64,000 nt of DNA from the IMG/VR virus record IMGVR_UViG_3300015265_000001, positions 162,986 through 226,985 of that record; one strand, 5' to 3'. Numbering within the stretch: the first letter of the stretch is position 1; each line of letters opens with the position of its first letter. Position numbers and translations under genes: made by a program. Below the pieces are notes generated by a model that was not told the origin of the DNA, did not search any database, and was given only the letters and a program-made list of their open reading frames with translations. This document shows positions 36,064 through 58,616 of the stretch, in pieces.

Positions 36064-37752
36064 ATGTACATGCAGCTTTCTAACAACAGCAGCCGTTACG
36101 GTGATTTGCAACGTCGCGATACTCAAGATGTTGTTGAGGATGTGATGACGGATGTCCGTGACGCCGTTGTAGCGACCATGGGTCCAAACGGTAAGCTGTC
36201 CGCCATTACAGTCGGCACCAGTGTTAAAGTGACCAAAGACGGCGTAACAGTCGCCAAGTCGCTGAAGTTTGCCAACCCGTTCGAAGAAGCTGTTAACCGC
36301 ATCATTCTGGAACCGGCAATCAAGACCGATGACGAATGCGGTGACGGCACCACCACCACCATCCTGCTGACCGCAGAACTGTATCGCCTGTACGCTCAGT
36401 TCCCTCGTTATCGTGAACGCAAGTTCATCGACAAACTGGGTAACAAAATCATTGACCAACTTATCCGTTTGTCGGTGAAAGTCGACAACGACAGTGAGGA
36501 CCTGTTTAACCTGGCTCTAACGTCCTCTAACGGCGATGAGAAGCTCGCGGCGGTCATTACTAGTATCTATCTCGATGCTGGCGGCCGATACCCTGAGATC
36601 GAGCTCAAGGAAGGCCTGGGCGGTGATGACCAGATTGTTCGTAGCAACGGTCTGCCAGTAGCGCTGTCATACAGCAACCCATCCTTCTCGAAGAACGGCA
36701 ACGGCTCGACGTCCGACTTCACTGGATTCCGCGCGATTGTGATCGACGACAACGTCCGCAACATGGAGTCCCACGTCCTCGGTCCAATCCTGGCTAAACT
36801 GATCGAAGTTAATCCACAGCCGGTCCTGTTGATTGCTCGTTCTTTCGACAACCCAATCAACAGCATCATCCTGCAAGTCAACAACCAACTGAAGCGCCAG
36901 GCGTTCATCTGCGCACAAACCAACTTCGGTGGCTCGGTCGGTACTCTGCTGATGCAGGATATCTCCGTGCTGTTGAATGCACCGATGGTGAAAGTGTTCT
37001 CCGACGTCGTTAACGTCGAAACCACGATTTGCCTGGAAACTCTTCATATCGGTTCCGTTCGTTCGATCTTCGAACCTCAGATCGAGGCCACTCGTTTCCG
37101 TATCGACGAGCAAGTAGCATCGATCGAGAAGGAGCTGAACAGTTACGAGCGTGGTGAACGTTTCAGTGTTCGTGCACGTTTCAACGAGAAGCGTATCCGT
37201 GACCTTAAGGGCGAGCTGGTTACCGTGTTCGTCGGTGGCGAAACTCAGTCCGAGATCAAGGAACGCATCGACCGTTTCGAAGACGTATCGAAAGCTGTCA
37301 AGTCGGCGTTGGAGAACGGTATCCTGCCGGGCGTCGGTACTGCGTTGATTACTGCGGGTGTATTTGCACTCAACGATCTGTCCGATGAAGAAGAGGAAGA
37401 TCCAGAGTTCAAGAAGATCATTGAAGTGATGGAAGAAGTGATCTTCTCCCAGTACATGCTGCTGCAAGGCGAACTGATACTGCCGAACGACTCGCGTAAC
37501 CAACAGGCAAAAGAGCGCGCTATCCGCAGTGGGATCACCGGTCGGGTACTTGATATGGATGAACCTCGTCCATTCATCGTAACCAACCTGCGCGATAACA
37601 GTACTGGTACTCCGACTGAGTTGGGTATCTTCGATACGGCCTATGCATCGATCACTGCTCTGCGGGGTGGTATGCAAACGGCCAAGATCCTGGCGAGCCT
37701 CGATAGCGTTCTGATCGGGGACAAGCTGTCGGCGGTTAAAATCCAATCGTAA
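36064..37752 (+). CDS. groEL: Phage GroEL-like chaperonin
   Basis: TMGPNG, VTKDGVTVAK, GDGTTT, GG...EIKERIDRFEDV..AVKSALENGILPGVG, LGIFDT; no GGM tail. Confidence 0.93.
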   Translation: MYMQLSNNSSRYGDLQRRDTQDVVEDVMTDVRDAVVATMGPNGKLSAITVGTSVKVTKDGVTVAKSLKFANPFEEAVNRIILEPAIKTDDECGDGTTTTILLTAELYRLYAQFPRYRERKFIDKLGNKIIDQLIRLSVKVDNDSEDLFNLALTSSNGDEKLAAVITSIYLDAGGRYPEIELKEGLGGDDQIVRSNGLPVALSYSNPSFSKNGNGSTSDFTGFRAIVIDDNVRNMESHVLGPILAKLIEVNPQPVLLIARSFDNPINSIILQVNNQLKRQAFICAQTNFGGSVGTLLMQDISVLLNAPMVKVFSDVVNVETTICLETLHIGSVRSIFEPQIEATRFRIDEQVASIEKELNSYERGERFSVRARFNEKRIRDLKGELVTVFVGGETQSEIKERIDRFEDVSKAVKSALENGILPGVGTALITAGVFALNDLSDEEEEDPEFKKIIEVMEEVIFSQYMLLQGELILPNDSRNQQAKERAIRSGITGRVLDMDEPRPFIVTNLRDNSTGTPTELGIFDTAYASITALRGGMQTAKILASLDSVLIGDKLSAVKIQS

Positions 37753-45705: not shown

Positions 45706-46293
45706 ATGATTTCTAAAGGGTTGTGTTACACCAACGACTTCCCCCTGCGAAATGCAGGAGAAGCTCAGTTCAAAGTTTCACGTGAAAATGGAGAGATCAT
45801 TACTCGCTCAGTACACTGGAGTCAACGGCAACACACGATCTTGATTCGCCACGGTCTCCGTGAACCGATCCAGTTCTACGGCGTTACACAAAGTGCTCAC
45901 GGTAACCTGATTGCCATGAGTGACGGGCATTACACTCGTTACTACTGGACTACCATGACAGGTCGTCGTGATACGTATGTGCTTCAAGGTTCTTCGGCTA
46001 CCTTCGAGGAAGCTTGGGAACATTTGTTTGAGGCGTTAGTGCTAGATGGGCGTATGCCGTCCATAGGGCTCTATAACCGCATCAGCTTCCTTTTCATCTG
46101 GTACTTCAACCAGATAGAAGAGCAACCCGTTGTACGTGCCACAGAAGGCTTCTGGCGCGGTGTAAAGAAACAAGTATTGTTTGAATGGTTACCTGAAATT
46201 GGCAAACGAGCCGTTAAGGTCACCATCGCTGGTTCCCAACCTGTCGCAGTACCCCTGGCGGATCACCCGCTTGTTGGCTTGCTGCGCAAATAA
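45706..46293 (+). CDS. Hypothetical protein, paralog of 46310
   Basis: TFEEAWEHLFEALVLDGR...VPLADHPLV. Confidence 0.8.
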   Translation: MISKGLCYTNDFPLRNAGEAQFKVSRENGEIITRSVHWSQRQHTILIRHGLREPIQFYGVTQSAHGNLIAMSDGHYTRYYWTTMTGRRDTYVLQGSSATFEEAWEHLFEALVLDGRMPSIGLYNRISFLFIWYFNQIEEQPVVRATEGFWRGVKKQVLFEWLPEIGKRAVKVTIAGSQPVAVPLADHPLVGLLRK

Positions 46294-46309
46294 GCAAAGA
46301 GGCTTCAAA

Positions 46310-46762
46310 ATGTCTAACGCTCAAATCAAGTACCACATGACCGCCCTTTTCCGTCTCGACAATGGTCAACAACTGTACATGTCCTCTCATGGGCATCAGA
46401 CCTCTTACATTGTGTCGGGCACGCCCAGCCGTGGCGGTACTGCTTACCTGATTGAACAACCATCCCATTCGGTAGAAGAAGCTATCGAAACGCTGTTCAA
46501 GAAACTCGTGATGGATGATCGTGAAGTGTCGATCAACTATTACAACCTGGTCAGTGAATTCTTCATCAAGTATTTTGATCAGGGGGCTACTGAATACAAA
46601 GCTACCCTGAGTGGCCGGTGGCACAACCTGTTTCTCCACGTAGAGCTGGAGCGTACCGAGGGTCTCAGCGGTTCTTTGATGTTCTTCCGTGTTCACGACA
46701 AAGAAATGTTGGTTCCGTTGTACACGCACCCAATGGTTCACATCCTTGCATCTAAGGTGTAA
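46310..46762 (+). CDS. Hypothetical protein, paralog of 45706
   Basis: SVEEAIETLFKKLVMDDR...VPLYTHPMV. Confidence 0.8.
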   Translation: MSNAQIKYHMTALFRLDNGQQLYMSSHGHQTSYIVSGTPSRGGTAYLIEQPSHSVEEAIETLFKKLVMDDREVSINYYNLVSEFFIKYFDQGATEYKATLSGRWHNLFLHVELERTEGLSGSLMFFRVHDKEMLVPLYTHPMVHILASKV

Positions 46763-47018: not shown

Positions 47019-47026
47019 ACGGCTAT

Positions 47027-47078
47027 AACTACTCTCACCCCACAAAGGGTGAGAGTAGTTAGCCTATTCTTTATTTTT
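47027..47078 (+). terminator. Rho-independent terminator
   Basis: AACTACTCTCACCC / GGGTGAGAGTAGTT then a T-run. Confidence 0.8.
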
Positions 47079-47117: not shown

Positions 47118-47816
47118 ATGAACGAAGCTTTATTATCTACAGTGAAGAAAATAGCCAGTGGAGGAGGCCCGGGCCCCACTACACTTACTACGGGCGATGA
47201 CACCAATGGGCTGTTTGGTTCTGTTCCAGCCGGATCCTTCTTTACTGGCGGCGAGTTAGCAACTGCCGTAGGTGCGGGCTCAATGGGGACTTTGATCAAC
47301 GACACCACCGACTGGTTTAAACTAAGCAAAGATGGTCGGGTCATCTACATCCCACAGAAGGCCATCCGTATTGGGCTAACGTGGAACATGATTGATGGTC
47401 TAGGCATCAGAACCCGGGAGCAAAACAAGATCGTCACAAAAGACGGACATAATTATCTGGTTCGATTGATGACGGGGACGGGAGCTGCTTGGGCAGGACA
47501 GTTGGGTGATGACCCTGGGGGGTGTTCCGATAGTGAATACAACCGGTTTATCTATCGTCTCTGTGCTTTGAATCCTGCCAGCGAGACACCGCCAGTCTTG
47601 GGTTCTTACACATTAGCAGAGTTAGGACTGACCATAGCCAGTAACGGCTGTTGTGTGATTTGCCAAGAAGGTCTTAGCAGCACATACATACAGCGTAACG
47701 GCGGTGGCGAGACGAATAACAATGGAACCAGCTGGACCTCTATCCAGAATGGTGTGAACAGCAATCTCGGTGATCAGTATCGCGGTTGGCGTCCTGTGTT
47801 GGAACTTATTGATTAA
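47118..47816 (+). CDS. Virion/tail paralog (GWRPVLEL family), orphan + strand copy
   Basis: GLFGSV, WFKLSKDGRVIYIPQK, YLVRLMTG, SEYNRFIY, GWRPVLELID. Confidence 0.85.
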   Translation: MNEALLSTVKKIASGGGPGPTTLTTGDDTNGLFGSVPAGSFFTGGELATAVGAGSMGTLINDTTDWFKLSKDGRVIYIPQKAIRIGLTWNMIDGLGIRTREQNKIVTKDGHNYLVRLMTGTGAAWAGQLGDDPGGCSDSEYNRFIYRLCALNPASETPPVLGSYTLAELGLTIASNGCCVICQEGLSSTYIQRNGGGETNNNGTSWTSIQNGVNSNLGDQYRGWRPVLELID

Positions 47817-47870: not shown

Positions 47871-48329
47871 CTATGCGGCCAAGGCCACAGGCTTAGGTTG
47901 AGTTGGATTCTTAACCAGTCGGTACAGATTTACACCCAACATGATTGTTTTCTTTTTCCATGGAGTAACGCTGCTAACGTCCATGGATTCTTTCAGAATG
48001 GCGTCGATCTCTTTGCGTGTTACAGCAACTTGAGTTTCGACACCGTTCACTAATTCGGTGATGCAGTACGTGGTGCAAAGCTTGTCGTGGAGGGTGGTGT
48101 TCTGAGTGTATTCACCAATAGGAGGAAGTAACCACCACAACAACCGGGGGATTGTCGCTCCGTCGGTTTGGAATCCGGTTTCTACGTCAACCCAACGGGT
48201 AGAGTTTTCAGACCCGATGTAGTAGCGAAAACCCGGTACGGTATCCCACAGGTCTTTACCGTTGAGTACACTCGCAGTTTTGTTGTAACGCAGTTGTTCT
48301 TCAGCGCTGAACCGTGTAAATGTGCTCAT
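47871..48329 (-). CDS. DUF1353-like protein
   Basis: TGFQTDGATIPRLLWWLLPPIGEY...LHDKL. Confidence 0.75.
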   Translation of the reverse strand: MSTFTRFSAEEQLRYNKTASVLNGKDLWDTVPGFRYYIGSENSTRWVDVETGFQTDGATIPRLLWWLLPPIGEYTQNTTLHDKLCTTYCITELVNGVETQVAVTRKEIDAILKESMDVSSVTPWKKKTIMLGVNLYRLVKNPTQPKPVALAA

Positions 48330-48350
48330 CAACGTCCTCCTGGAATGGAT

Positions 48351-48375
48351 GCCTCCCCCTCATGGAAGGGGAGGC
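48351..48375 (-). terminator. Hairpin
   Basis: GCCTCCCCT...AGGGGAGGC. Confidence 0.5.
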
Positions 48376-48383
48376 GGTGGTGT

Positions 48384-49037
48384 TTACAACGAGAAGTATT
48401 CCGCGGGGGCTACCGGGAGATCTTCAATGGTAGCGGCATTGGCGATGGCGTCTTTGTACGCCCACGACACGTTGTAGCCAGCAACAACCTGTTGGAACGT
48501 TCTGTCAGCCAGAGCAACCATTTCTGGTGCAGTGAGTGATACCGAAACGTTTTCGAACACACGGAACGGGAACGACATCTCCTGGTTGGCTGCAATCATT
48601 TCCTTGGCGATGGTACGCAAGTCGGAAATGTTGCCGCGGTCAGAAGCGCGCACCTGTACGTGGTAGATGGTGTCTTCGCTGAACTGGTAAGGGAACCCCT
48701 TGGCGAACGCAGCAATACGCAACGACTCGGCTTGAGCAGCAAGCGTTGTCTTACGGTCCTGGAGCTGGCCTGCGGCTTCTACTTCGCTGTAGGAACGCAC
48801 TACCCAGGTTTGGTACCAATGGCCGTCACGCAGCTCTGGAGCGCCCTCAGTGACCACATCACCGGCAGGAGCGGGAGTGTCTTCGACAACTTCAAAACCC
48901 AGTTCGAAAAGCAGGTCCGAATCAACGGTTGGTCCGAAGCAAGTGTTCGGTTGATACTTGGGCATGTCAGCCAAGTAAATTGGGTACGCGCCCGAATCAG
49001 AATGAATCAGACGGGTGGTGCGAGTTACTGTGGTCAT
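48384..49037 (-). CDS. Tail-fibre assembly/chaperone-like protein (DUF4376-like C-terminus)
   Basis: N-terminal GxEVVEDTPAP...ELRDGHWYQTWVVR; C-terminal FR..EN....LTAPEM.......V..Y...W..KDAI. Confidence 0.65.
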   Translation of the reverse strand: MTTVTRTTRLIHSDSGAYPIYLADMPKYQPNTCFGPTVDSDLLFELGFEVVEDTPAPAGDVVTEGAPELRDGHWYQTWVVRSYSEVEAAGQLQDRKTTLAAQAESLRIAAFAKGFPYQFSEDTIYHVQVRASDRGNISDLRTIAKEMIAANQEMSFPFRVFENVSVSLTAPEMVALADRTFQQVVAGYNVSWAYKDAIANAATIEDLPVAPAEYFSL

Positions 49038-49047
49038 AAACGTTTCC

Positions 49048-49953
49048 TTAAAGGATGAGTTCGAAAAGAGGCCGCCAGCCGTGAAGTGAGTGAGTGGCAC
49101 TAGCGTTCAGGCTGACGTTCAGGAGATCAGGGTTGGCGCCGCTGCCTCGGTTAATGCAAGTGCTGCTTTGCAGGTCGGTAGAGAACGTAATCCAACTGGC
49201 GTTGGCGATATCGTCCAATTGCTTGAGCCCTAGCGTGTCAGGATAGTTACGAGCCTGGAACGCGTAGGAGAGAATCAAGTCATACTCGCCGCCAATCTGG
49301 TCAGCCGCCACAGCGCTGGTGCTTGCCATTACCGCACGAGAAGTAGGGACCCGCATAACAAAGGCGTTATCGCCACGGTTAACGACCTTACCCTGTGCAA
49401 TGGTACCAAACGTGGTCTTGGCATACGGCGCCCAGTCAGTGCTAGGGAAGTTACCGTAGATCACACCAGCTCGATACAGTTGCTCCCAGGTCAGTGTGCT
49501 GAACAGCGCCTGGCTAGCGATATAGATAATTTTTCCTTTATACACGAACTTCAACCAACCCAAGGTGGCGTCGGTGTTCTCTGTCACAGTGGCGGCAAAG
49601 CCACCCGCAAACACTTTGCATTCTTGTGCCGAGAACAGGTCAGACATCGGCATCTTGCCGAAGTAACCAAAGTTCCAGTCACCACGAAGCAGAGTCTGTG
49701 GGCCCGGGCCAGTATAAGGCATGTAGGCCAACGCCTTGTTAGGGGTCAGCGCCACATCGGTTCCCTTACGAGAAGCTACCCGGTAGTAGTACAGTTGATT
49801 ACGTACTACGGTGTTATCCGTGTAGGTCAACGTTCCGGCAGGGACAACCGCCAACGACGCAGGAAGCGACGCATCAGCAATCGGTGAAGCGGAACGGTAG
49901 ATCGTGTAGTCATCCGCCGTGTTAGGGTCGGTCCAATCAAGCTTGATGGGCAT
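49048..49953 (-). CDS. Tail-associated virion protein: Fn3-like + GWRPVLEL domain
   Basis: IKLDW...YTIYRS...YTD...YYYRV; GPGPQTLLRGDWNFGYFG; GWRPLFELIL. Confidence 0.85.
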   Translation of the reverse strand: MPIKLDWTDPNTADDYTIYRSASPIADASLPASLAVVPAGTLTYTDNTVVRNQLYYYRVASRKGTDVALTPNKALAYMPYTGPGPQTLLRGDWNFGYFGKMPMSDLFSAQECKVFAGGFAATVTENTDATLGWLKFVYKGKIIYIASQALFSTLTWEQLYRAGVIYGNFPSTDWAPYAKTTFGTIAQGKVVNRGDNAFVMRVPTSRAVMASTSAVAADQIGGEYDLILSYAFQARNYPDTLGLKQLDDIANASWITFSTDLQSSTCINRGSGANPDLLNVSLNASATHSLHGWRPLFELIL

Positions 49954-49964
49954 TTAACCCTCCG

Positions 49965-50912
49965 TTAAGCCGGGATGTATTCAAGAACAGGTACCCAGGA
50001 AATCCAGGACCCCGATGCGGCACCTGTGATGGCCCGCGCGAAAACGTCTGACCAGTTGCTGTTGCTAACCGACCAGTTGTTTGTAGAGTTGAAGTGTTGG
50101 GTGGCAGTCAACGGATAAGGAACCCCAGTTGCATCACCCCATTTGTTTGGTTGCAGCAATGGAACGTCAGCGGCCAGAATAGACGTGGTCAGGGAGCACA
50201 TCAGTTCACACCATTCACTGCCTTTAAAGGTGGTGCGATCTGGTACGTTCTGGTCTGTCGCCAGGGTGCTGTTTTTAGGGCAGCGCACTAGGAAGCTGTC
50301 ACTGCCTACCGTTACCACTCTTTTCTGGTTAACCGTGGTCGGGATGTTCGGGCTCGCCCCTACCGTGGTCAGGTTGAATGGAGCGGCACCAGGGCCGTCT
50401 ACTCCATACACCAAACCTTGGTTGTAGATCTGAGACCACGTCGCTGTCCCCGTTGCTGTAAAGATGGCGTTGGGGAAGAACAAGATCTTGCCTTTAAAGA
50501 CAAACTTGTACCAACCCGTCATCGTGTTATCAGCGGGAGCACTACCTATCTGGTTCGTGATCGATAAAGCGGATCTGAGACCAGAGATAGTAAACAGCTG
50601 GGCAACGGGGACAAACCCCATATACCCGGCGTTCCAGTCGCCCCGGAGAACGGTATTGTTACCAGGTCCCGTTTTGGAGAAGTTACCGTACAACATGCAT
50701 TGGCTGTATTGCGTCGTTGCGCCTGCTTTAACGGCCTCCAGCATGTAGTAACGAACACTTCGATCCGCAACCGTGGTATCTGTATAAGTCACGTCGGTAG
50801 GGCTCAACACAACCTTTGTAGCGGGTAGAGCAGCCCACGTAAACGGAGTGTCCGACCAATACAGCGTCAGACCATCTACCGTCATCGCAGGCCAATCGAT
50901 TTTAATCGACAT
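49965..50912 (-). CDS. Tail-associated virion protein: Fn3-like + GWRPVLEL domain
   Basis: IKIDW...YTD...YYML; GPGNNTVLRGDWNAGYMG; SWVPVLEY. Confidence 0.85.
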   Translation of the reverse strand: MSIKIDWPAMTVDGLTLYWSDTPFTWAALPATKVVLSPTDVTYTDTTVADRSVRYYMLEAVKAGATTQYSQCMLYGNFSKTGPGNNTVLRGDWNAGYMGFVPVAQLFTISGLRSALSITNQIGSAPADNTMTGWYKFVFKGKILFFPNAIFTATGTATWSQIYNQGLVYGVDGPGAAPFNLTTVGASPNIPTTVNQKRVVTVGSDSFLVRCPKNSTLATDQNVPDRTTFKGSEWCELMCSLTTSILAADVPLLQPNKWGDATGVPYPLTATQHFNSTNNWSVSNSNWSDVFARAITGAASGSWISWVPVLEYIPA

Positions 50913-50921
50913 AAGGACTCC

Positions 50922-51872
50922 TTAACTATCGATCAGTTCGAGTACTGGCCACCAGCCATAATTAAGGCCGTTGTACGTTGCGATACCACGGTTGGCAATA
51001 CCCGTACGGTTCGCCGTTGTGTTACCCCGCAACAGGTTGTTAGAGGCCGCTACAGCCGACACACGTTCCTGAATAATGGAACCGAGAGTTACGCCTGTCA
51101 GCGCCATGCCCAAGTCAGCAACGGTCGCCTGCTGAACGTTAGCCATGCGCTGAAGGTCTGGACAGTACATCGACAACGGATAGATAATGTCATTCCATTC
51201 GTTTGGCCAGAGTTCAGTTGGTTCCGTAACTGACGGAGTTGCGGGGAAACGTGTCAGGGTGTCATCAAACCCCGTCATGCAGCGAACACGGAACTGATCG
51301 CCACCGATGGTAACCTTGGCACTTTGGTTAACGTTGGCGCCGGCGTTGTACGGACCAGGGCCGTCCACACCGAAGACCAGACCCAGGTCGTAAAGGGTTT
51401 TCCAACTGATGTTACCGCACAAAGGACCGTTAGGAACAAAGAGTACTTTGCCGTTACGAATCCATTTATGCCAGATAGGGCCCTGTTGGTTAACCGAACC
51501 TACGGTCAGACCCACTGCGGCACGCAAGTCGTTGGTGTTAATCAACTCACCCGACGTAACTGTGCCGAAGTAACCGTAACTGAAATCGCCAATCGTAACC
51601 GCTACTGGGCCGGGGCCTTTACGAGGGTTTGCAACGATTGGGATGTTGTTGGAACTTTGCTTATCCCCGTTTGCGGTCAGGGTGGTTTCAAACACGTAGT
51701 AATACGTCGTACCACGAACAGTAGTGGTATCGGTGTACGTGCTCTCGCCTGCGCTCAACGTAGCAATGGGGTTAGCCAGGTTGGAGCGGTCAAGTGGCGA
51801 GGTGCCTCGGTAAATCTTTGTGGTGAACGTACCTGGGGCGTTCAGGTTCGTCCAGTTTAGTACCGTATCCAT
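50922..51872 (-). CDS. Tail-associated virion protein: Fn3-like + GWRPVLEL domain
   Basis: LNW...KIYRG...YTD...YYYVF; GPGP...GYFG; GWWPVLELID. Confidence 0.85.
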   Translation of the reverse strand: MDTVLNWTNLNAPGTFTTKIYRGTSPLDRSNLANPIATLSAGESTYTDTTTVRGTTYYYVFETTLTANGDKQSSNNIPIVANPRKGPGPVAVTIGDFSYGYFGTVTSGELINTNDLRAAVGLTVGSVNQQGPIWHKWIRNGKVLFVPNGPLCGNISWKTLYDLGLVFGVDGPGPYNAGANVNQSAKVTIGGDQFRVRCMTGFDDTLTRFPATPSVTEPTELWPNEWNDIIYPLSMYCPDLQRMANVQQATVADLGMALTGVTLGSIIQERVSAVAASNNLLRGNTTANRTGIANRGIATYNGLNYGWWPVLELIDS

Positions 51873-51882
51873 ATTTCATTCC

Positions 51883-52893
51883 TTAAGCGACGTAAGACCC
51901 AGAGATGGTGAAGGCCTTGAGCGTGGAGGACTCGTTGGTTCCTTTGATGCCGATAGGTTTTAGGGCCAAGTCGGCAAAGCTGTAGGTGACCTGCGGCAAT
52001 TGGTATTGCCAGAGTTGTTGACGAGGATTGGCTGGGCGTATGGCGCCCAAAGACCATTGCCGTACATCGTTGATGACAGGGGCGAAAGGACCGACCGAGT
52101 TATAACGGAGTGCGTACGGATCTTTAGCCACGGTATCAGGAATAAGTTCCAATACCGGACGCCAGCCATGAATGCTACTTGAGCCAGAAAGTTTATCCGT
52201 CTTAAGTATGGTTCTGGCCATAGCCAAGATTTGACCAGAGGTACCGTCACCACGAACAATGCATTGGTTGACATTAGACGTGATGGTTTCTTGCACAATG
52301 GTGTCTGGACTGGACGATGGGGACAGACCAGTAGCCGCGTAGGTAAAGTTTGCAAACTTGGGTGCACCTACTCCGCCGTTCGAATCGTTAACGGTACGAC
52401 CAAACAGTTGGTTCCATTCCCCAGTGAAGATGTTGCCTCCCGTAGTAGGATCAGCTGGGTAACCTGTCGGTAGACGTGGTTTCAGAACCCACAACTTCTG
52501 ACCTTCATACTTCGGCATCTGGATGTATTGGAACTTTGGAGTTGCCAACGGATACTTACCGTTATCCCGAGTTCCGTATACCAGACCGGCGGCATAAAGA
52601 TCAGCCCAGGAGATGTTGCTACGGAAAGGCATCTTCGCAATGAAAATGACTTTACCGTTCCAAATGAACTTCAGCCACATGTTACCGTTAGCCGCAGCGA
52701 CCGCAGTGGGGTTGTCCGTCCCCAGATACAAGCCAGCCTGCCCAGCAACCTGAGCAGGTGTAAACAGCTGAAGATCGGTTACCTCACCAAAGTAACCTAG
52801 GGTTGCATCACCGGCAATTAGAGTCTTAGGACCAGGCCCAGAATCGCCGATGTAAATTTGTTGGCCCCCCGTGGAGAGCAGCGTTTCAATCAT
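51883..52893 (-). CDS. Tail-associated virion protein (GWRPVLEL domain + C-terminal extension)
   Basis: Start at 52893 (MIETLL; GAGG RBS); GPGPKTLIAGDATLGYFG; GWRPVLELIP. Confidence 0.85.
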   Translation of the reverse strand: MIETLLSTGGQQIYIGDSGPGPKTLIAGDATLGYFGEVTDLQLFTPAQVAGQAGLYLGTDNPTAVAAANGNMWLKFIWNGKVIFIAKMPFRSNISWADLYAAGLVYGTRDNGKYPLATPKFQYIQMPKYEGQKLWVLKPRLPTGYPADPTTGGNIFTGEWNQLFGRTVNDSNGGVGAPKFANFTYAATGLSPSSSPDTIVQETITSNVNQCIVRGDGTSGQILAMARTILKTDKLSGSSSIHGWRPVLELIPDTVAKDPYALRYNSVGPFAPVINDVRQWSLGAIRPANPRQQLWQYQLPQVTYSFADLALKPIGIKGTNESSTLKAFTISGSYVA

Positions 52894-52906
52894 GATACTT
52901 CCCTCT

Positions 52907-54160
52907 TTAAGCAGGTCCGACGAGTTCCAATACCGGACGCCAGCCGTAACCACCGTGAGTGGATCCAGGAGCCTGATACCACAAACCATTGAACCCTGGA
53001 TAACCTCGAGTTAGAGGACCGTTGGTTGAGTACTTTTCTTGGCAGAGCGTCAGCTCGCCGTTGGCAGTACCGCCGTTCCAGTAAACATCAGTGTTGCTGT
53101 AGTTCGCCCATCGATCAGATGCTGGACCGGTGTAGTTCACAGTTACACGTCCAAAGTAGGCGTTATACTCACCACCACCCGAAGACGCCGGATCTGCGTT
53201 ACCACCCGTCATTACGCGGACTTTGTAAATGTTACCGCCGATGTTAAGTGTTTTGGTACCTTTAATAGCACCGATAGCATCGAGGGTTTCCCACAGTACC
53301 GCCGTCCGCATCGGTTTCTTAGCGATGTAGAACGTCTTGCCATTATCAATAAACTTCAACCAGTTCGGGTTAGGGTCAACCAAAACTGTACCCGTGATAC
53401 CCAATGCAGTTGCCAATGCGCTTGCCGTGATCAGATCTGCACCGGCGACCTCACCCTTAAAAGGACTTGGTGGAATGCTGGATTTCTTTACCAGCACTGG
53501 GCGCCAACCGTAATACCCTTGTGGGTTATTGGCCGGCATATTCCAGATACCCATGATTGGGTGGTTGCCGCTGGAGTTCTGCCAGTCGTTACCGCGCAAG
53601 CAGTAACCGTTAGTCAAACTTTCAGCACAAACGGTAAATACACCGTCGCTAAGGTCAGCACCACCAGGAGCACCTAACCCCAACATTGTTCTTGTGTAAT
53701 TACCCCAAATAGGAGCGGATTCGATACCGACACGATCCGTGTTGTCATAAATGGCGTACATGTAACGGTTCCACTCGCCGCCGGCGTTGGAAGGCACTGC
53801 CGCTGCTGCGGTAGAAATAGCACCCGTCATCATTCGGACAATGTACACTTCGCCCCTGACGGTGATTTCTTTTGCCCCGTTGCTTGTTGCAGCCATGATC
53901 TGTTCGTACGTTGCAGCTGCACGAATAGGTTTCTTGGCAATGTACAGCTCGAGACCAGAATCTTCGATGAAATGGAGCCAGCCGCTATCGACGTTCATCG
54001 CAACCCCTGCTGACAATCCCACCAGGGTAGCCAGGGCGTCCCCGTAAACAAAGTCGGCAGACCCTGTTATTCCTTTATACGGTGTTCCAGCTGGAAAGGG
54101 TATGTCCGAATTGTCGTTAGCTCCCTGTTTATATCCTAATCCAAGCATTGCTTCGATCAT
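52907..54160 (-). CDS. Tail-associated virion protein with two tandem GWRPVL domains
   Basis: YYGWRPVLVKK and GYGWRPVLELV. Confidence 0.85.
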   Translation of the reverse strand: MIEAMLGLGYKQGANDNSDIPFPAGTPYKGITGSADFVYGDALATLVGLSAGVAMNVDSGWLHFIEDSGLELYIAKKPIRAAATYEQIMAATSNGAKEITVRGEVYIVRMMTGAISTAAAAVPSNAGGEWNRYMYAIYDNTDRVGIESAPIWGNYTRTMLGLGAPGGADLSDGVFTVCAESLTNGYCLRGNDWQNSSGNHPIMGIWNMPANNPQGYYGWRPVLVKKSSIPPSPFKGEVAGADLITASALATALGITGTVLVDPNPNWLKFIDNGKTFYIAKKPMRTAVLWETLDAIGAIKGTKTLNIGGNIYKVRVMTGGNADPASSGGGEYNAYFGRVTVNYTGPASDRWANYSNTDVYWNGGTANGELTLCQEKYSTNGPLTRGYPGFNGLWYQAPGSTHGGYGWRPVLELVGPA

Positions 54161-54191
54161 GGTTTGATCCTTTAAAAGGAAAAGCAGCGCA

Positions 54192-54218
54192 AGGGGATCA
54201 CCCCGAAGGAGATCCCCT
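54192..54218 (-). terminator. Hairpin
   Basis: AGGGGATC...GATCCCCT. Confidence 0.55.
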
Positions 54219-54229
54219 GCACTAAGTGG

Positions 54230-57200
54230 TTAAGGAACTACGGCACCCGCTGCGCCCGTCCACTCCACACCATCCCAGGTGAAGGTGATGTAGGTACGGC
54301 TACCAGTCAGAGCTGGTGGCGAACCACCGTTCCAGACCAGCGCTGTCGCACCCGTAGGAGCAAAGGTAATTACCCCCGCTGCACCGTTGATTTTCATCAC
54401 CAGCACTTTGGCTCGGGCAGGGGATTTTGGTCCGTCGCCCAAGGTAATGGTTTTGGCTGTAGCGCCGGTGTTCGTCACAACGATGAACTGATCAACCAAT
54501 GCATCGATCGTAGCCGTTGCCGAAATAGTCCGGATAGCCAGATCGTACTGGTTGAATTCAATCCAGCCGTTGTTCTTGTAGACGTAGGTCTTGTTGTCGT
54601 TACCACCAGCTGGGCCGGAGATACCAGGAGTAACCGGCGTGTAGACAACCCACGTGTGGTCACCTTTACGCAGGTACAGGTTGGTATCAGTCGGTACGTC
54701 AGCAAAGCCAGGTACGAAGGCGTTGATCTGGGCTTGCAGCTTACCGAAGGCTGTGATGACAGTATCAGCGGCTACAACAGCGGTGGCGGTTGCCAGGCTG
54801 AAGCCAGTCAGCGTAGTCGAACGAACCCGTGCTTGCGTGAAGTAGAGGTTAGTGGTGCCCTCTACAACAGCGTCCGAGGTACCTGGAGAAGCTACCAGCC
54901 CTACATACGTCGAACCCGACCAACGGTATTGCGCGTTGGTGTTGAGCGCGATGTAGATTTTGCCAGATTCACCTGTAGCCGGGAAAGCCGCTTGGTTAGC
55001 GAACTCCAACACGTCATCGACATAGCTCGGCAGTTGACCTGCCGGGATGGTGCCGTTAACGAGGGTAGCAACCGAAACGCCCAGCTCTGTAAGAGCAACA
55101 CCGCCCAGGCTAGCCAGTGTAGGAGGGGTATAAACCGCCCAGTCACCGAGCAGCTGCCCATTCAGGCGCAGACGCATGTACGGATTGCCATCAGCCGGTG
55201 GTTCGTTGATTTGAGGTGGGAATACCAGCTCAACCCACTCACCTTCGTTGGTGGTACTGCCGTCAACCAATTGGCGAACGTACAGCTTACCGTCAACCAT
55301 GTTCGGCGCTTCGTCTACCAGCAGAGGTACCCACTCGTTACCGAGGCGGACAACCTTACCAACAGACACCTCTGGCGAGTTGACATCACCCGCAACCAGC
55401 TGACCCCAGTAGACCCAACCGCGATCCGCCGTTTTGTAGTAGACCTTGAAGCTGTCCGATACAGCCCAGTCACCGATGTTACCGGTGAAGCCAGCACCCG
55501 GAGCATCTTGGCCGGCAGGCAGAGTAATCCAGGACGAACCTTTATCACCCTTGTCGCCTTTCTTGCCAATGCCCTGAGGGCCAGGAACACCCTGGATACC
55601 CTGAGGACCACGAACCAGACCGATGTCGATCCACTTACCACCATCGGCAGTCGTCCAGATGGCCAGGTTGTTACCAACCAGATAACCGTCACCCAGGTTG
55701 CCTGTAGGGTGAGCAGTTGCCAGATCACCCAGAGTGTTGTACGCACCGAGGATGTTGATCGACGTACCCGCGTCACCTTTCTCACCGTCTTTACCTTGAG
55801 GACCAGGCAGACCAGTGATATCGAAAGGACCGGCCCACGCACCATCGGTCAGGACATAGAGCATCTTGTCGTTGGCGGTGAAGTAACCATCGCCTTCTTC
55901 AGCAACAGAGGTAGTTGGCAGGTAAGTAGGACCAGCCACCACACCACGCAGCTTGATACCGGTACCCATCGGGCCTTTGTCGCCAGGCGCGCCTACGGCA
56001 CCACCATCAACCCACTCACCACCGATAGACAGCCGAATGCGTTTGTCCAGGTCAACGTAAGCCTTACCTGGGTTAGCCGCAGCATCCGGTGGAGTGGCGT
56101 CTTCTGGTGTCAGTACCTTGATGATGGTAATCGAGGAACCATTTGCACCATCGTTACCGTTCTGCCCGTCTTCACCTTTGAAAGACCCCAGAGGGATCCA
56201 GCCACCACCTACATAAGCGTAGAGGGTATTGGTGTCACGTACCGAGTAAACATCTTGCTCGGCAGGTGTAGCGGTCAGTTCAGTAAAGGTCGAAACCGAA
56301 CCTTTGATGATGATGTTGGTACCGTTAGTGCCGTTGGTGCCTTTAAGGCTGACCAGGAACTCATTCTCGGAACCGCTGTGACCTTGAGCCAGCCACAGTT
56401 GATACGTCGATTGACCGCGGAATGGACCTACGTCTTCCCACACGCCTTCGGTGAGAATGTGCAGGTGGCCATCGTCATTGGTGACGTAGCCGTCTTGCTC
56501 TTCTGGGTTTACGATGTTGCCCAGTTGAGCAGCGTTGGCCACGGTGCCTTTAACAGTCAGGTTCTTACCGCGAGGACCATCCGGACCTGGTACAGTCGAC
56601 TTGAGGGAAACCAGCCACTGTTGCAGAGTACCGGAGAAACCGTCTTCCACAGCCAGTTCGTAGGCGGACAGACCACCAACCGAACCGAGGTCAACGTATT
56701 GGGCTTCATCGGTCACCCAGACGTACAGGTGACTACCGACATACCAGGCTTCAGTTGCAACACCCGGCGTCGGCAGAGCGGCTTCAGATGGCTGAGAACC
56801 CTTGACTTCGAAAGGAGACCGCGCAGGACCTTCGTTGCCCGGAGGACCAGGTTCAGTGGACTTCAGGGTATTCAGGAAGTCTTGCAGCGTGCCAGCGTTG
56901 CCGGCCTGCAACCAGAGTTGGTAGTTATCCTTACCGACCAGGCTTGCCAGCCATTGAGGCTTAGTACCCGAGAAGCCATCTTCGACGGCGATCTCATAAG
57001 CACTTTGACCAGCAGGACCTTCCAGACCCAGCGAAGACCATACTGGTGTTTCTGGATCATTACCCGCACCGCCAGGGATCAGGATCCAGAGATCGCTCTT
57101 CCACAGGTATGCATCACCAACAGCGTTGATGCTTGGATCCGGCAACGCTTGACCCGAAGGCCAGGTACCCAGCAGTGTCAGACCGCGGTCGCCCAACAGG

Positions 57201-57988
57201 CTACCAGAATCGACCCACTCAGTGCTGTTCCAGATAAACAGCGCGCCTTCTACGAAGTAAGCCGTACCGTTGGCCAGACCTTCAGTAGGAATGGCATCCA
57301 GCTCAGCCTGAGAATTCAGACGACCGATAACCTTGATGTTACCGACCTCGCCATCCTTACCTTGCAGGCTGGCAATCCATTCTGCTTCGGTACCGATGGT
57401 AGGGTCCAGGCGTTTGGCCGTTTGGTAAGCGGATTCACCCACCAGCTTGGCCAGCCACTGAGGTTCAGTACCGGTTTCGCCGTTGGCTACCGCAACCTCG
57501 TAGGCGCTCCTGCCGTCGTCACCTTTCAGACCGATAGTGACCCAGCCGTCAGGTTGAGGAATGAGCAGCCAGATGTCGCTCTTCCAGACATACGCGTCAC
57601 CCACTTCGTTCAGGGTGTGATCCGGCAGGGCCTGGTTATCTGGCCAGGTACCCAGCAGGGTGATACCACGAGGACCCAACAGGGAACCCGAGCTTACCCA
57701 TTCAACGGCGTTCCATACTTGCAGCGAGCCTTCAACAAAGTAGGCGTCGCCTTTGCCCAGGCTTTCGGTTGGGAGAGCATCCAATTCAGCCTGGGTGATA
57801 CGACCGATAACGTTCAGACCGTTAACCACCAGAGCCAGGAACTGGTCGTAGAGGTAACGGGTACGGTTAGCCAGGAGAATAGGGGCACGGTTGTCCGGGC
57901 CATCAGGACCGCCACGGACGGGTTCCCCTTGATCGATAAGGGGGATGTCTTGGGGGAATACACTTTCTTCAGTGATGTTTGTAGGCAT
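54230..57988 (-). CDS. Long tail fibre with collagen-like, SAYExA repeat and foldon-like modules
   Basis: Gly-X-Y runs; SAYExAVxxGFxGTxxxWLASL repeats; ~50-aa knuckle repeats; DVLEFANQAAFPATGESGKIY; VVEGTTNLYFTQARVR. Confidence 0.88.
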   Translation of the reverse strand: MPTNITEESVFPQDIPLIDQGEPVRGGPDGPDNRAPILLANRTRYLYDQFLALVVNGLNVIGRITQAELDALPTESLGKGDAYFVEGSLQVWNAVEWVSSGSLLGPRGITLLGTWPDNQALPDHTLNEVGDAYVWKSDIWLLIPQPDGWVTIGLKGDDGRSAYEVAVANGETGTEPQWLAKLVGESAYQTAKRLDPTIGTEAEWIASLQGKDGEVGNIKVIGRLNSQAELDAIPTEGLANGTAYFVEGALFIWNSTEWVDSGSLLGDRGLTLLGTWPSGQALPDPSINAVGDAYLWKSDLWILIPGGAGNDPETPVWSSLGLEGPAGQSAYEIAVEDGFSGTKPQWLASLVGKDNYQLWLQAGNAGTLQDFLNTLKSTEPGPPGNEGPARSPFEVKGSQPSEAALPTPGVATEAWYVGSHLYVWVTDEAQYVDLGSVGGLSAYELAVEDGFSGTLQQWLVSLKSTVPGPDGPRGKNLTVKGTVANAAQLGNIVNPEEQDGYVTNDDGHLHILTEGVWEDVGPFRGQSTYQLWLAQGHSGSENEFLVSLKGTNGTNGTNIIIKGSVSTFTELTATPAEQDVYSVRDTNTLYAYVGGGWIPLGSFKGEDGQNGNDGANGSSITIIKVLTPEDATPPDAAANPGKAYVDLDKRIRLSIGGEWVDGGAVGAPGDKGPMGTGIKLRGVVAGPTYLPTTSVAEEGDGYFTANDKMLYVLTDGAWAGPFDITGLPGPQGKDGEKGDAGTSINILGAYNTLGDLATAHPTGNLGDGYLVGNNLAIWTTADGGKWIDIGLVRGPQGIQGVPGPQGIGKKGDKGDKGSSWITLPAGQDAPGAGFTGNIGDWAVSDSFKVYYKTADRGWVYWGQLVAGDVNSPEVSVGKVVRLGNEWVPLLVDEAPNMVDGKLYVRQLVDGSTTNEGEWVELVFPPQINEPPADGNPYMRLRLNGQLLGDWAVYTPPTLASLGGVALTELGVSVATLVNGTIPAGQLPSYVDDVLEFANQAAFPATGESGKIYIALNTNAQYRWSGSTYVGLVASPGTSDAVVEGTTNLYFTQARVRSTTLTGFSLATATAVVAADTVITAFGKLQAQINAFVPGFADVPTDTNLYLRKGDHTWVVYTPVTPGISGPAGGNDNKTYVYKNNGWIEFNQYDLAIRTISATATIDALVDQFIVVTNTGATAKTITLGDGPKSPARAKVLVMKINGAAGVITFAPTGATALVWNGGSPPALTGSRTYITFTWDGVEWTGAAGAVVP

Positions 57989-58028
57989 GACTCGTCCCTT
58001 CAGGAAATGAGTTTAAAGATGTAGGTCC

Positions 58029-58616
58029 TTACTGGTAGGTAAGAGTCCCGTCGTGCAGATACGTGCCGTCGTGGATAGCGTCAGTGATAACACCACCGTT
58101 ACTTTCAACAATCGTCAGAGTACCTACAACGGTATGTGAATCGATGGTAACCAAAGTCACCGGTTGATCAATCGAGATTTCTTCATCAGCCAGCACATAC
58201 TTGCAGCTGTTCTTGATGATTTGCAGCACTGTTGCAGCGTCTTTGGAACCCTTACTCACCAAAACTGCCCCCGACACACTATCACCCTCTCCTGACAGAA
58301 GGTAAATGCCCTGTACCGTTTTTGCCTGAAGATCAGCAAGGGCCAGCGGTGTGGGTTCAATCAGGTTAGCCGGTCCATTGGCAGTGTAGTCAGCCGGCTG
58401 ATACTTCTGGTCGACTCCTGTGAAAAGGGACGGTGAATCAACATCGACCAGGTAAGTGATGATGCCCGCATTGTCCGCTTTACGGAAATTCGAGAAAGTG
58501 ACTTGGCCGAGGGTCAGGGCTGTGAGTGCATTTACGAAGGTCGGTTCATCCTTATAGCGGTCTTGGTTATAAGCGATAAACCTGTCCAAAAACAGTTGTT
58601 CGTTTGGAAAGGCCAT
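58029..58616 (-). CDS. Probable virion protein heading the fibre operon, paralog of 38085
   Basis: Start at 58616 (MAFPNEQLFLDRF); C-terminal HDGTYLHDGT. Confidence 0.75.
   Translation of the reverse strand: MAFPNEQLFLDRFIAYNQDRYKDEPTFVNALTALTLGQVTFSNFRKADNAGIITYLVDVDSPSLFTGVDQKYQPADYTANGPANLIEPTPLALADLQAKTVQGIYLLSGEGDSVSGAVLVSKGSKDAATVLQIIKNSCKYVLADEEISIDQPVTLVTIDSHTVVGTLTIVESNGGVITDAIHDGTYLHDGTLTYQ

What the first reader, a model, noticed from the sequence alone, without database searches (positions are those of the whole stretch)
49048..54160. Array of lectin-like tail paralogs with hypervariable C-termini but no reverse transcriptase
Seen: five tandem genes carry six copies of one domain, and a seventh lies at 47118. 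The shared scaffold is GPGP..L..GD...GYFG, W.KF...GK...I, W..LY..GL.YG, ..VR.MTG, [GS]E[WY]N, then G-W-R-P-V-L-E-L. The ~20 aa before GWRP differ completely: SLNASATHSLH, AITGAASGSWI, GIATYNGLNY, KTDKLSGSSSIH, MPANNPQGYY, QAPGSTHGGY, NGVNSNLGDQYR. Three copies have an N-terminal Fn3/Ig-like domain. Known: DGR targets (Mtd, TvpA; C-type lectin fold) present their variable residues just before a terminal G-x-R strand. Inference: a fixed, duplication-built receptor-binding repertoire, analogous to a DGR library.
Basis: partly seen in the sequence, partly recalled or inferred. Interest (0 to 1): 0.6.

Follow-up and report, generated by a model that had tools for sequence, protein, structure and literature searches.

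The report
DGR-type lectin tail tips without retroelement
A 227-kb soil jumbo phage carries seven old gene copies of a lectin-like tail-tip domain that smaller phages mutate with a diversity-generating retroelement, but this phage has no such element and seems to rely on duplication and ordinary mutation instead.

Summary
Six genes carry exactly seven copies of one ~190-240 aa domain: gF 47118-47816 (+), and gA, gB, gC, gD and two-copy gE at 49048-54160 (-). The complete 226,985-bp genome has no other copy.

The domain has no Pfam model. It belongs to the phiKZ gp83 / EL gp155 / 201phi2-1 gp452,456 family of "virion structural proteins". An AlphaFold2 model (pLDDT 95) matches only C-type-lectin/FGE-like folds: Lcl-C Z 7.5, TvpA 6.4, Mtd 5.2. 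gA-gC also have an N-terminal Fn3 domain.

The key new result is homology to real DGR targets (31% identity, E 3e-22). In four other phage contigs the domain ends a ~1000-aa fibre and is followed by Avd. A reverse transcriptase follows in three; the fourth contig ends first. The adenine-biased variable repeat encodes exactly the residues before GWRP.

The window's genome and eight jumbo relatives have no RT, and the window's genome also lacks Avd and a template repeat. The paralogs are ancient, with 1:1 orthologs across relatives. In gB-gD the pre-GWRP loop is a replacement hotspot between close strains, about 2.6-fold pooled over all five array genes.

Best reading: germline-encoded receptor-binding tips, a DGR-less counterpart of a DGR library. 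Binding and virion position are inferred, not shown.

The parts
47118..47816 (+). gF: single-domain copy (232 aa), convergent with the array; long-branch singleton
   Evidence: The domain HMM scores 269 bits. PHROG 1062 matches at E 3e-41. The tree places gF on a long branch on its own. A close strain (L100) has a 447-aa two-domain gene on the other strand at this place instead.
47736..47783 (+). gF loop equivalent to a DGR variable repeat (16 aa before GWRP)
   Evidence: The equivalence comes from alignment to DGR targets.
47871..48332 (-). DUF1353 protein (PHROG 1158, 'tail assembly chaperone')
   Evidence: Pfam matches at E 8e-17 and PHROG at 7e-33. The same gene follows lectin-ending fibres in L019, L068 and L100.
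48384..49037 (-). DUF4376 protein (PHROG 4998), directly after gA
   Evidence: Pfam matches at E 1.5e-12 and PHROG at 1e-60. In DGR-bearing relatives the avd-TR-RT cassette sits between the lectin-ending fibre and this gene family.
49048..49953 (-). gA: Fn3 + lectin-like domain (301 aa); VR-equivalent loop at 49081-49128
49965..50912 (-). gB: Fn3 + lectin-like domain (315 aa); VR-equivalent loop at 50001-50048
   Evidence: Against strain L100 the loop holds 6 of 21 replacements.
50922..51872 (-). gC: Fn3 (residues 1-84) + lectin-like domain (85-316); VR-equivalent loop at 50958-51005
   Evidence: AF2 models reach pLDDT 94 and 95. Among 59 orthologues the entropy peaks at residues 284-306.
51883..52893 (-). 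gD: lectin-like domain + conserved ~85-aa C-terminal extension (336 aa); VR-equivalent loop at 52168-52215
   Evidence: Against L100, 8 of 24 loop residues are replaced versus 20 of 312 elsewhere. A soil strain has a diverged 67-nt patch of the same length at 52165-52231.
52907..54160 (-). gE: two lectin-like copies (E1 53471-54160, E2 52907-53485), 417 aa; loops at 53510-53557 and 52946-52993 are conserved
   Evidence: Relatives fuse a Kelch propeller to its C-terminus.
54230..57988 (-). 1252-aa collagen-like tail fibre gene heading the operon
   Evidence: PHROG 3904 'tail fiber protein' matches at E 1.5e-168.
58029..58616 (-). ~195-aa protein homologous to the N-terminal domain that is fused to a lectin copy in Erwinia phage RisingSun gp201
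   Evidence: It matches PHROG 21620 positions 1-187. BLASTP against RisingSun gp201 residues 1-186 gives 30% identity, E 6e-17. The lectin domain of gp201 lies at residues 207-402.

Best explanation
The array encodes seven germline versions of a divergent C-type-lectin-fold receptor-binding domain. This is the same domain family that forms the distal tip of ~1000-aa tail fibres in smaller phages, where a diversity-generating retroelement (DGR) mutates it.

In this jumbo phage the retroelement is absent. Variety is supplied instead by ancient gene duplication (A, B, C, D, E1, E2, F). Each copy carries its own loop immediately before the terminal GWRPVLEL strand. That loop is the ligand-contacting patch by homology with the DGR variable repeats. 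Ordinary point mutation concentrated in that loop in gB-gD, plus cassette turnover at the gF slot, adds slow variation.

The proteins are probably made with the 1252-aa collagen-like fibre and mounted on the tail or baseplate periphery. The likely attachment points are the Fn3 domain (gA-gC) or the conserved M-I-E-x-L-L N-terminus (gD-gF). There they would bind different host surface glycans.

Shown: the fold, the homology to DGR targets, the position of the variable repeat, the absence of a DGR, the age of the paralogs, and the replacement hotspot.

Inferred: ligand binding, glycan specificity, virion location and mode of attachment.
For: **Fold.** The AF2 model of the gC domain has pLDDT 95.3. 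All 50 best VIA-align matches are CTLD/FGE-type folds: Lcl C-terminal domain Z 7.5, PvdO 7.1, TvpA 6.4, Bd2740 fibre tip 6.1, Mtd 5.2, TaqVP 4.7. Foldseek's weak hits fall in the same families.

**Family.**
- PHROG 1062/3589/16120 match.
- Related proteins are 201phi2-1 gp452/gp456, found in virions by mass spectrometry per the record's notes, and PhiPA3 080-083.
- RisingSun gp197-204 all carry the domain, and gp200 and gp204 were detected by MS.
- 33 BFVD matches are all jumbo-phage virion proteins.

**Tail-tip role.**
- A profile search finds 2,792 cluster representatives.
- In 120 of the 147 best hits in which the domain was delimited, the last copy ends within 10 aa of the C-terminus.
- Fusion partners are Kelch, Laminin_G_3, CBM_5_12 and collagen.

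**DGR link.**
- L014 and L018 have the order fibre, bAvd, RT, DUF4376. At template adenines lie 18 of 19 (L014) and all but one (L018) of the VR/TR mismatches, and the VR ends at GWRPC.
- L075 and L082 have targets ending in GWRPVLEL. L075: 15 of 20 mismatches at template adenines. L082: 7 of 11.
- The gE2 domain versus the L014 tip gives 31% identity, E 3e-22.

**Synteny.** The order lectin gene, DUF4376, DUF1353 recurs in the window, L019, L068 and L100.

**No DGR here:**

**Ancient paralogs:**

**Hotspot:**. The loop composition is enriched in Ser, Tyr, Thr, His and Asn.
Against: - No binding or virion-location data exist for any member of this family.
- phiKZ gp83 is not mentioned in the 2026 phiKZ structural atlas.
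- Fold Z-scores are middling (at most 7.5, rmsd 3-4.5 A). The fold call rests on the uniformity of the hit list and on homology to DGR targets.
- The loops of both gE copies are conserved, not variable.
- Strict 1:1 orthology and fixed gene order also fit non-redundant structural roles.
- The substitution spectrum between strains is ordinary transitions. Synonymous sites are saturated, so positive selection could not be tested.
Confidence: 0.7

Rival explanations
1. The paralogs are obligate, non-interchangeable building blocks of one hetero-oligomeric baseplate or fibre complex, as proposed for phiKZ gp131-135. On this view the lectin fold and its loops make phage-phage contacts rather than host contacts.
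For: - Each paralog is a 1:1 orthologous clade with conserved gene order.
- Purifying selection dominates.
- The gE loops are highly conserved.
- An N-terminal adaptor-like domain is encoded separately.
- phiKZ has a precedent for a paralogous fibre-base family.
Against: - Homologous domains are DGR targets, and DGR targets are diversified at ligand-binding surfaces.
- The domain is typically the very C-terminal, distal element of long fibres.
- It is fused to carbohydrate-binding modules.
- The loops of gB-gD are replacement hotspots between close strains.
- Copy number varies from 2 to 8 genes among related phages.
Confidence: 0.2
2. The array is a cryptic or trans-served DGR target. An RT and template encoded elsewhere (host, helper or an unassembled segment) would still diversify the loops.
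For: The domain family is a bona fide DGR target elsewhere. An Avd-like orphan gene sits in the cassette slot of one jumbo relative, L068.
Against: - The complete genome has no RVT_1, Avd or template repeat.
- Eight related jumbo records also lack an RT.
- Orthologous loops are largely conserved across phages whose synonymous sites are saturated.
- Differences between strains are ordinary transitions with no adenine bias on the coding strand.
Confidence: 0.03
3. The proteins are head, inner-body or ejected proteins, or FGE-like enzymes, rather than tail adhesins.
For: PHROG files the family under 'head and packaging / virion structural protein'. In Noxifer and PhiPA3 the genes sit beside RNA polymerase and DNA polymerase genes, not tail genes. 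FGE-type enzymes are among the fold matches.
Against: - The PHROG label is generic.
- In the window the genes lie in one operon with a tail fibre gene and with DUF4376/DUF1353 tail-fibre accessory genes.
- In small phages the domain ends the fibre gene that lies a few genes downstream of the tape-measure gene.
- No Pfam FGE-sulfatase signal appears even at E 5 in 84 members.
Confidence: 0.05

Closest known systems
DGR-targeted tail fibres of uncultured phages (loci L014, L018, L075, L082)
   Same: - Same domain family: 28-31% identity, E 1e-11 to 3e-22.
- Same R-G ... G-W-R-P terminal scaffold.
- The domain sits at the C-terminal tip.
- A DUF4376 gene lies downstream.
   Different: - They carry avd, a template repeat and an RT directly after the fibre gene, and show adenine-biased VR/TR mismatches.
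- The domain is fused to a ~900-1000-aa fibre.
- The window has seven free-standing copies and no retroelement.
phiKZ gp83 / EL gp155 / 201phi2-1 gp452, gp456 / PhiPA3 080-083 / RisingSun gp197-204 'virion structural proteins'
   Same: Same sequence family (PHROG 1062, 3589, 16120, 21620). Tandem paralogs are common, and several members were detected in virions by mass spectrometry.
   Different: Copy number and architecture differ. Relatives fuse Kelch propellers or an N-terminal adaptor domain. In the papers searched, none is described as a lectin fold or linked to DGRs.
DGR variable proteins Mtd (Bordetella phage BPP-1), TvpA (Treponema), TaqVP (Thermus)
   Same: C-type-lectin fold with the variable patch just before the C-terminal strand. 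Structural matches are Z 5.2, 6.4 and 4.7, with alignments running to the C-terminus of both proteins.
   Different: There is no detectable sequence similarity: a profile search of PDB sequences found nothing. The window has no RT or template repeat.
Legionella Lcl C-terminal domain (DUF1566-type), on a collagen-like stalk
   Same: It is the best structural match: Z 7.5, with 115 of 131 residues aligned. It is an adhesin tip associated with a collagen-like fibre.
   Different: The window's domain is about 100 residues larger, with insertions. No Pfam DUF1566 match was found.
phiKZ gp131-135 paralogous fibre family
   Same: A paralog array encoding peripheral tail-fibre components of a jumbo phage.
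   Different: The fold is different: a shared N-terminal domain plus a beta-propeller. It is a different sequence family.

Membership tests
Diversity-generating retroelement (DGR) system | A DGR-type reverse transcriptase encoded near the target or elsewhere in the genome | tested here: not met
   The complete genome has no RVT_1. tblastn with the RTs of the related DGRs finds nothing at E<=0.1. As a positive control, the same family search finds the RT in L075's record.
Diversity-generating retroelement (DGR) system | A template repeat / variable repeat pair differing at template adenines | tested here: not met
   blastn of all six genes against the genome, and the repeat finder, give only short motif-level matches.
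Diversity-generating retroelement (DGR) system | Accessory variability determinant (Avd) | tested here: not met
   PF22296 is absent. tblastn with Avd finds nothing significant.
Diversity-generating retroelement (DGR) system | A target protein with a C-type-lectin-fold domain whose C-terminal segment is the variable region | tested here: met
   The fold is shown. Homology to four DGR targets, whose VR maps onto the pre-GWRP segment, is shown.
C-type-lectin-like (CLec / FGE-type) fold | Overall fold similarity to solved CTLD/FGE-type structures, spanning the domain from the N- to the C-terminal strand | tested here: met
   All 50 top VIA-align rows are of this fold, with Z 4.5-7.5, and the alignments span model residues ~1-235. 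The model is predicted, not experimental.
C-type-lectin-like (CLec / FGE-type) fold | Canonical Ca2+/sugar-binding motifs of animal CTLDs (EPN/QPD, WND) | not tested
   No residue-level structural alignment or coordinates were available. DGR-type CLec domains generally lack these motifs (my own knowledge).
Pfam DUF1566 / FGE-sulfatase / DUF6273 | A match to the family HMM | tested here: not met
   The seven copies have no Pfam match at E<=0.1. The 84 members have none at E<=5. DUF6273 appears only as a weak language-model or structural lead.
phiKZ gp83-like virion structural protein family (PHROG 1062 and relatives) | A significant HMM match over the whole domain | tested here: met
   All six proteins match at E 8e-40 to 2e-134.
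phiKZ gp83-like virion structural protein family (PHROG 1062 and relatives) | Presence in purified virions | not testable with these tools
   It is reported for homologues only: 201phi2-1 gp452/gp456 in the record notes and RisingSun gp200/gp204 in PMC6034870.

The most novel reading that the evidence does not exclude
The jumbo-phage lectin arrays descend from a DGR-diversified tail-fibre tip whose retroelement was lost. Duplication then captured and froze several variable-repeat states as separate genes.

Two observations point this way. An orphan Avd-like gene sits in jumbo contig L068 exactly between the last lectin gene and DUF4376, which is the slot of the avd-TR-RT cassette in small phages, and that record has no RT. 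The loop composition is rich in Ser, Tyr, Asn and Thr, which would be a remnant of that history.
Probability: 0.3. Interest if true: 0.75.

Novelty: new variant of a known kind. Interest (0 to 1): 0.6.

Why it matters
**A function for an uncharacterised family.** The result gives a testable function, glycan- or receptor-binding tail tips, to a large family. The family has about 2,800 clusters at 50% identity and no Pfam model. It includes phiKZ gp83-like proteins found across jumbo phages. A 2021 survey reported no C-type-lectin-fold DGR-type domains in jumbo phages (PMC7824862).

**Two routes to variety in one domain family.** Small phages use retroelement mutagenesis. Jumbo phages use a germline multigene repertoire. 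This is a natural comparison of somatic-like and germline strategies for host recognition. It also suggests that large genomes may buy host-range breadth with gene copies.

**Where to mutate.** The homology tells experimenters which ~16-24 residues to mutate or compare.

Tried and rejected
**Searches that found nothing**
- Megablast of the region against GenBank phages gave no match.
- The search for related loci failed with the 7-copy alignment because no stretch was conserved enough.
- The search for related loci with the L014 tip found no relatives in IMG/VR.
- A profile search of PDB sequences gave only chance hits.
- Pfam found nothing.

**Fold search on the full-length gC model.** It was swamped by the Fn3 domain. 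I therefore folded and searched the lectin domain alone.

**Literature.** The phiKZ atlas, the Goslar preprint and the phiKZ transposon-mutagenesis preprint do not mention gp83 or this family. A search for gp452/gp456 found no paper.

**dN/dS.** Synonymous sites are saturated (pS about 0.7), so positive selection cannot be assessed.

**Complex prediction.** gE with the 58032-58616 protein gave no verdict, with a score of 0.00 and an uncertain partner fold. This is evidence neither for nor against binding.

**Chimallin and DUF7941.** Neither was found in the genome, but the controls were silent, so the result is inconclusive.

**Pairwise comparisons.** The window's fibre versus the L014 fibre body showed only collagen-like noise. 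The two DUF4376 proteins showed no pairwise similarity.

**Template-repeat remnant beside the orphan Avd in L068.** None was found.

**Readings rejected**
- A conventional or hidden DGR: there is no RT, Avd or template repeat, and the mutation spectrum is ordinary.
- An FGE-like enzyme: there is no family signal.
- The 23-nt identity between gD and gE2 as a DGR cis-element: it is only the shared GWRPVLEL codons in one pair of copies.

Full report
**What the window is.** The window is the last 64 kb of a 226,985-bp virus record with direct terminal repeats, which CheckV rates 100% complete. It holds the finding's genes. The closest named relative by protein similarity is Pseudomonas phage Noxifer, with 64% identity for the two-domain protein. 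Weaker relatives occur across phiKZ-related jumbo phages of Pseudomonas, Erwinia, Ralstonia and Salmonella. Contigs nearly identical to the region occur in rhizosphere and soil metagenomes.

**Checking the observation.**
- ORF listing and motif search confirm five tandem minus-strand genes: gA 49048-49953, gB 49965-50912, gC 50922-51872, gD 51883-52893, and gE 52907-54160 with two copies. gF lies at 47118-47816 on the plus strand.
- A six-frame HMM search finds no further copy in the genome.
- The array lies in a minus-strand operon. Its order is a ~195-aa protein (58029-58616), a 1252-aa collagen-like tail fibre (PHROG 3904), gE, gD, gC, gB, gA, a DUF4376 protein and a DUF1353 protein.

**What the domain is.**
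- Pfam has no model for it, even at E 5 over 84 members.
- PHROG places it in families 1062, 3589, 16120 and 21620, labelled 'virion structural protein'.
- GenBank notes identify the family as phiKZ gp83 / EL gp155 / 201phi2-1 gp452 and gp456 (both found in virions by mass spectrometry) / PhiPA3 080-083.
- Erwinia phage RisingSun has eight tandem genes, gp197-204, that all carry the domain. Six of them have the same ~84-aa N-terminal region as gA-gC. Two, gp200 and gp204, were detected by mass spectrometry (PMC6034870).
- Tandem arrays of this family therefore already exist in published genomes, but only as unnamed structural proteins.

**Fold.**
- AlphaFold2 with a 94-sequence alignment gave gC at pLDDT 94. 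Residues 1-84 are an Fn3 domain, with Z 8.0-8.5.
- The lectin part alone, with 84 sequences, gave pLDDT 95.3 and pTM 0.92.
- VIA-align against 48,161 PDB representatives returned only C-type-lectin or FGE-type folds in all 50 rows listed: Legionella Lcl C-terminal domain (Z 7.5), PvdO (7.1), TvpA (6.4), the Bdellovibrio Bd2740 fibre tip (6.1), many animal CTLDs (5-6), Mtd (5.2) and TaqVP (4.7).
- Foldseek's weak hits and the second-look alignment agree.
- The Z-scores are middling, so the fold call rests on the uniformity of the list.
- The alignments reach the C-terminus both of the model and of Mtd, TvpA and FGE. This places the pre-GWRP segment where DGR variable regions lie.

**The decisive link.**
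- A profile of 59 domain copies, searched against 1.84 billion cluster representatives, found 2,792 proteins at E<=1e-3. Some have up to eight copies per protein.
- In 120 of the 147 best hits in which the domain was delimited, the last copy ends within 10 residues of the C-terminus. GWRPVLE is the dominant terminal motif.
- Fusion partners are Kelch propellers, Laminin_G_3, CBM_5_12, collagen, DUF285 and CotH.
- Context look-ups were done for six of these hits; four were long proteins ending in the domain:
  - P0139 (locus L014), on an 84-kb contig a few genes downstream of a tape-measure gene, is followed by bAvd, an RVT_1 reverse transcriptase and a DUF4376 gene.
  - P0137 (L018) has the same order.
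  - P0141 (L019) and P0131 (L020) have DUF4376 (and, in L019, DUF1353) but no RT.
- In L014 a 98-nt repeat links the end of the fibre gene to the region between avd and the RT. It has 19 mismatches, 18 of them at template adenines. A second variable repeat ends the protein's first domain copy.
- L018 shows the same pattern.
- BLASTP of the window's gE2 copy against the L014 tip gives 31% identity over 199 residues, E 3e-22. That is as close as the window's copies are to one another.
- A scan of IMG/VR for the terminal motif returned 77 loci, about 46 of them on contigs of 200 kb or more. Two small contigs carry DGR parts directly after a target ending in GWRPVLEL:
  - L075 has Avd and an RT, with 15 of 20 mismatches at template adenines.
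  - L082 has Avd and is then cut off by the contig end, with 7 of 11 mismatches at template adenines.

**No DGR here.**
- The window's genome has no RVT_1 and no bAvd.
- tblastn with the RT and Avd of L014 and L018 finds nothing.
- There is no template-like repeat.
- Eight related jumbo records and L068 also lack an RT, while the same search does find the RT in L075's record.
- gA's stop and the DUF4376 start overlap, so no room is left for a cassette.

**Age and dynamics of the copies.**
- A maximum-likelihood tree of 60 copies from the window and nine related loci puts A, B, C, D, E1 and E2 each in a strongly supported clade shared by several phages. gF is a long-branch singleton. The duplications therefore predate these phages.
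- Among 59 gC orthologues the entropy peaks at residues 284-306, at 2.49 bits against a domain mean of 1.62.
- Across orthologue sets, the 21 residues before GWRP differ 1.4-1.7x more than the rest in A-D, but not in E1 or E2.
- Non-synonymous divergence is 0.27 versus 0.16, and synonymous sites are saturated.
- The closest strain (L100) is 92-97% identical for gB to gE and 83% for gA. Against it, replacements are enriched in the 24 residues before GWRP in gD (8/24 versus 20/312), gC (5/24 versus 15/292) and gB (6/24 versus 15/291), but not in gE or gA. Pooled enrichment is 2.6-fold, p 3e-5.
- A soil contig that is 96-97% identical in the flanks has a 67-nt patch of the same length, too diverged to align, at 52165-52231. 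That is gD's loop.
- The substitution spectrum there is ordinary transitions, with no adenine bias on the coding strand.
- At the gF position, L100 has a 447-aa two-domain gene on the other strand. That slot therefore turns over between close strains.

**A possible trace of history.** In jumbo contig L068 (220,598 bp, with terminal repeats) the gene order is a DUF7941 protein, a lectin gene, an Fn3+lectin gene, a 115-aa bAvd-like ORF, DUF4376, DUF1353 and a muramidase. The bAvd-like ORF matches PF22296 at E 1.5e-5 and 25.9 bits, below the curated cut-off of 40, and covers positions 3-98 of 107. The record has no RT, and no template repeat lies nearby. The Avd-like gene occupies the slot that the cassette holds in L014 and L018. 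This is suggestive of loss of a DGR in a jumbo lineage, not proof of it.

**How it most likely works.**
- The seven domains are germline-encoded receptor-binding tips.
- The scaffold, from GPGP..GD..GYFG through W.KF..GK, VR.MTG and GEWN to R-G and GWRPVLEL, holds a loop that contacts the ligand. The loop is rich in Ser, Tyr, Thr, Asn and His.
- Different paralogs present different loops.
- The Fn3 domain (gA-gC) or the conserved M-I-E-x-L-L N-terminus (gD-gF) would attach them to the fibre or baseplate.
- The protein at 58029-58616 is homologous to the N-terminal domain that RisingSun gp201 fuses to a lectin copy. It may be the adaptor. A complex prediction gave no verdict.
- These mechanistic steps are inference.

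**Novelty.** Phage receptor-binding proteins with C-type-lectin folds, DGR targets, non-diversified relatives of DGR targets and paralogous fibre genes are all known. Three things seem unreported in the papers I could search. The first is that the widespread gp83-like jumbo-phage family has this fold. The second is that it is homologous to DGR-mutated fibre tips. The third is that it is deployed as multi-gene arrays without the retroelement. Iyer et al. 2021 state that they found no such domains in jumbo phages (PMC7824862), and only two papers hold the three search terms together. I rate it a new variant of a known kind, with interest 0.6.

Noticed in passing
window 47118-47816; L100:7681-9024: The gF slot differs between close strains. 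L100 is 92-97% identical for gB-gE. After DUF1353 it has a 447-aa two-domain gene ending in GWRPIIEEV on the array's strand. The window instead has the 232-aa gF on the opposite strand.
   Followed up: partly
L068:7874-8221: An orphan bAvd-like ORF (below the Pfam threshold but aligned over its full length) lies between the last lectin gene and DUF4376 in a 220-kb jumbo contig. The record has no RT and no template repeat nearby. It may be a relic of a lost DGR cassette.
   Followed up: partly
L003:10001-12088, L005:16217-18403 (also Noxifer gp78): In relatives the two-domain gE-type protein carries a ~280-aa C-terminal Kelch beta-propeller. This explains the old 'Kelch-like ECH-associated protein' annotations of EL gp155. 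The window's gE lacks it.
   Followed up: partly
window 58029-58616 (-): A small protein upstream of the fibre gene is homologous (30% identity, E 6e-17) to the N-terminal domain that RisingSun gp201 fuses to a lectin copy. It is a possible split adaptor.
   Followed up: partly
window 51883-52140 (-): gD has an ~85-aa extension after GWRPVLELIPD, ending in ...FTISGSYVA. It is conserved in orthologues, has no family match, and its role is unknown.
   Followed up: no
window 52145-52167 and 52923-52945: An identical 23-nt stretch encodes GWRPVLEL in gD and gE2, although the two genes are only ~30% identical in protein. The other copies use different synonymous codons. It may be chance or a small gene-conversion tract.
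   Followed up: partly
window 53999-54066: A soil-metagenome contig (run X5) has a 68-nt patch of the same length, too diverged to align, in the N-terminal part of gE. It is a second local mosaic patch besides the one in gD's loop.
   Followed up: no
L016/L017:8001-14519: One 2,172-aa protein carries eight copies of the domain plus a DUF285 region. Its gene lies about 2 kb from a chimallin gene on a contig of up to 210 kb.
   Followed up: no
window 36064-37752 (+): The phage encodes a GroEL-like chaperonin (PHROG 5725, E 5e-119).
   Followed up: no
window 45706-46293 and 46181-46762 (+): By eye, two adjacent small ORFs look paralogous: they share a ...EEA.E.LF..LV.D.....I..YN..S..FI.YF.Q tail. 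Neither has a family match.
   Followed up: no
window 47026-47061 (+): A perfect 15-bp stem-loop lies just upstream of gF. It is probably the terminator of the preceding plus-strand genes.
   Followed up: no
window 48000-58000: The minus-strand fibre and lectin module has higher G+C (0.51-0.56) than the surrounding plus-strand genes (about 0.49-0.50).
   Followed up: no
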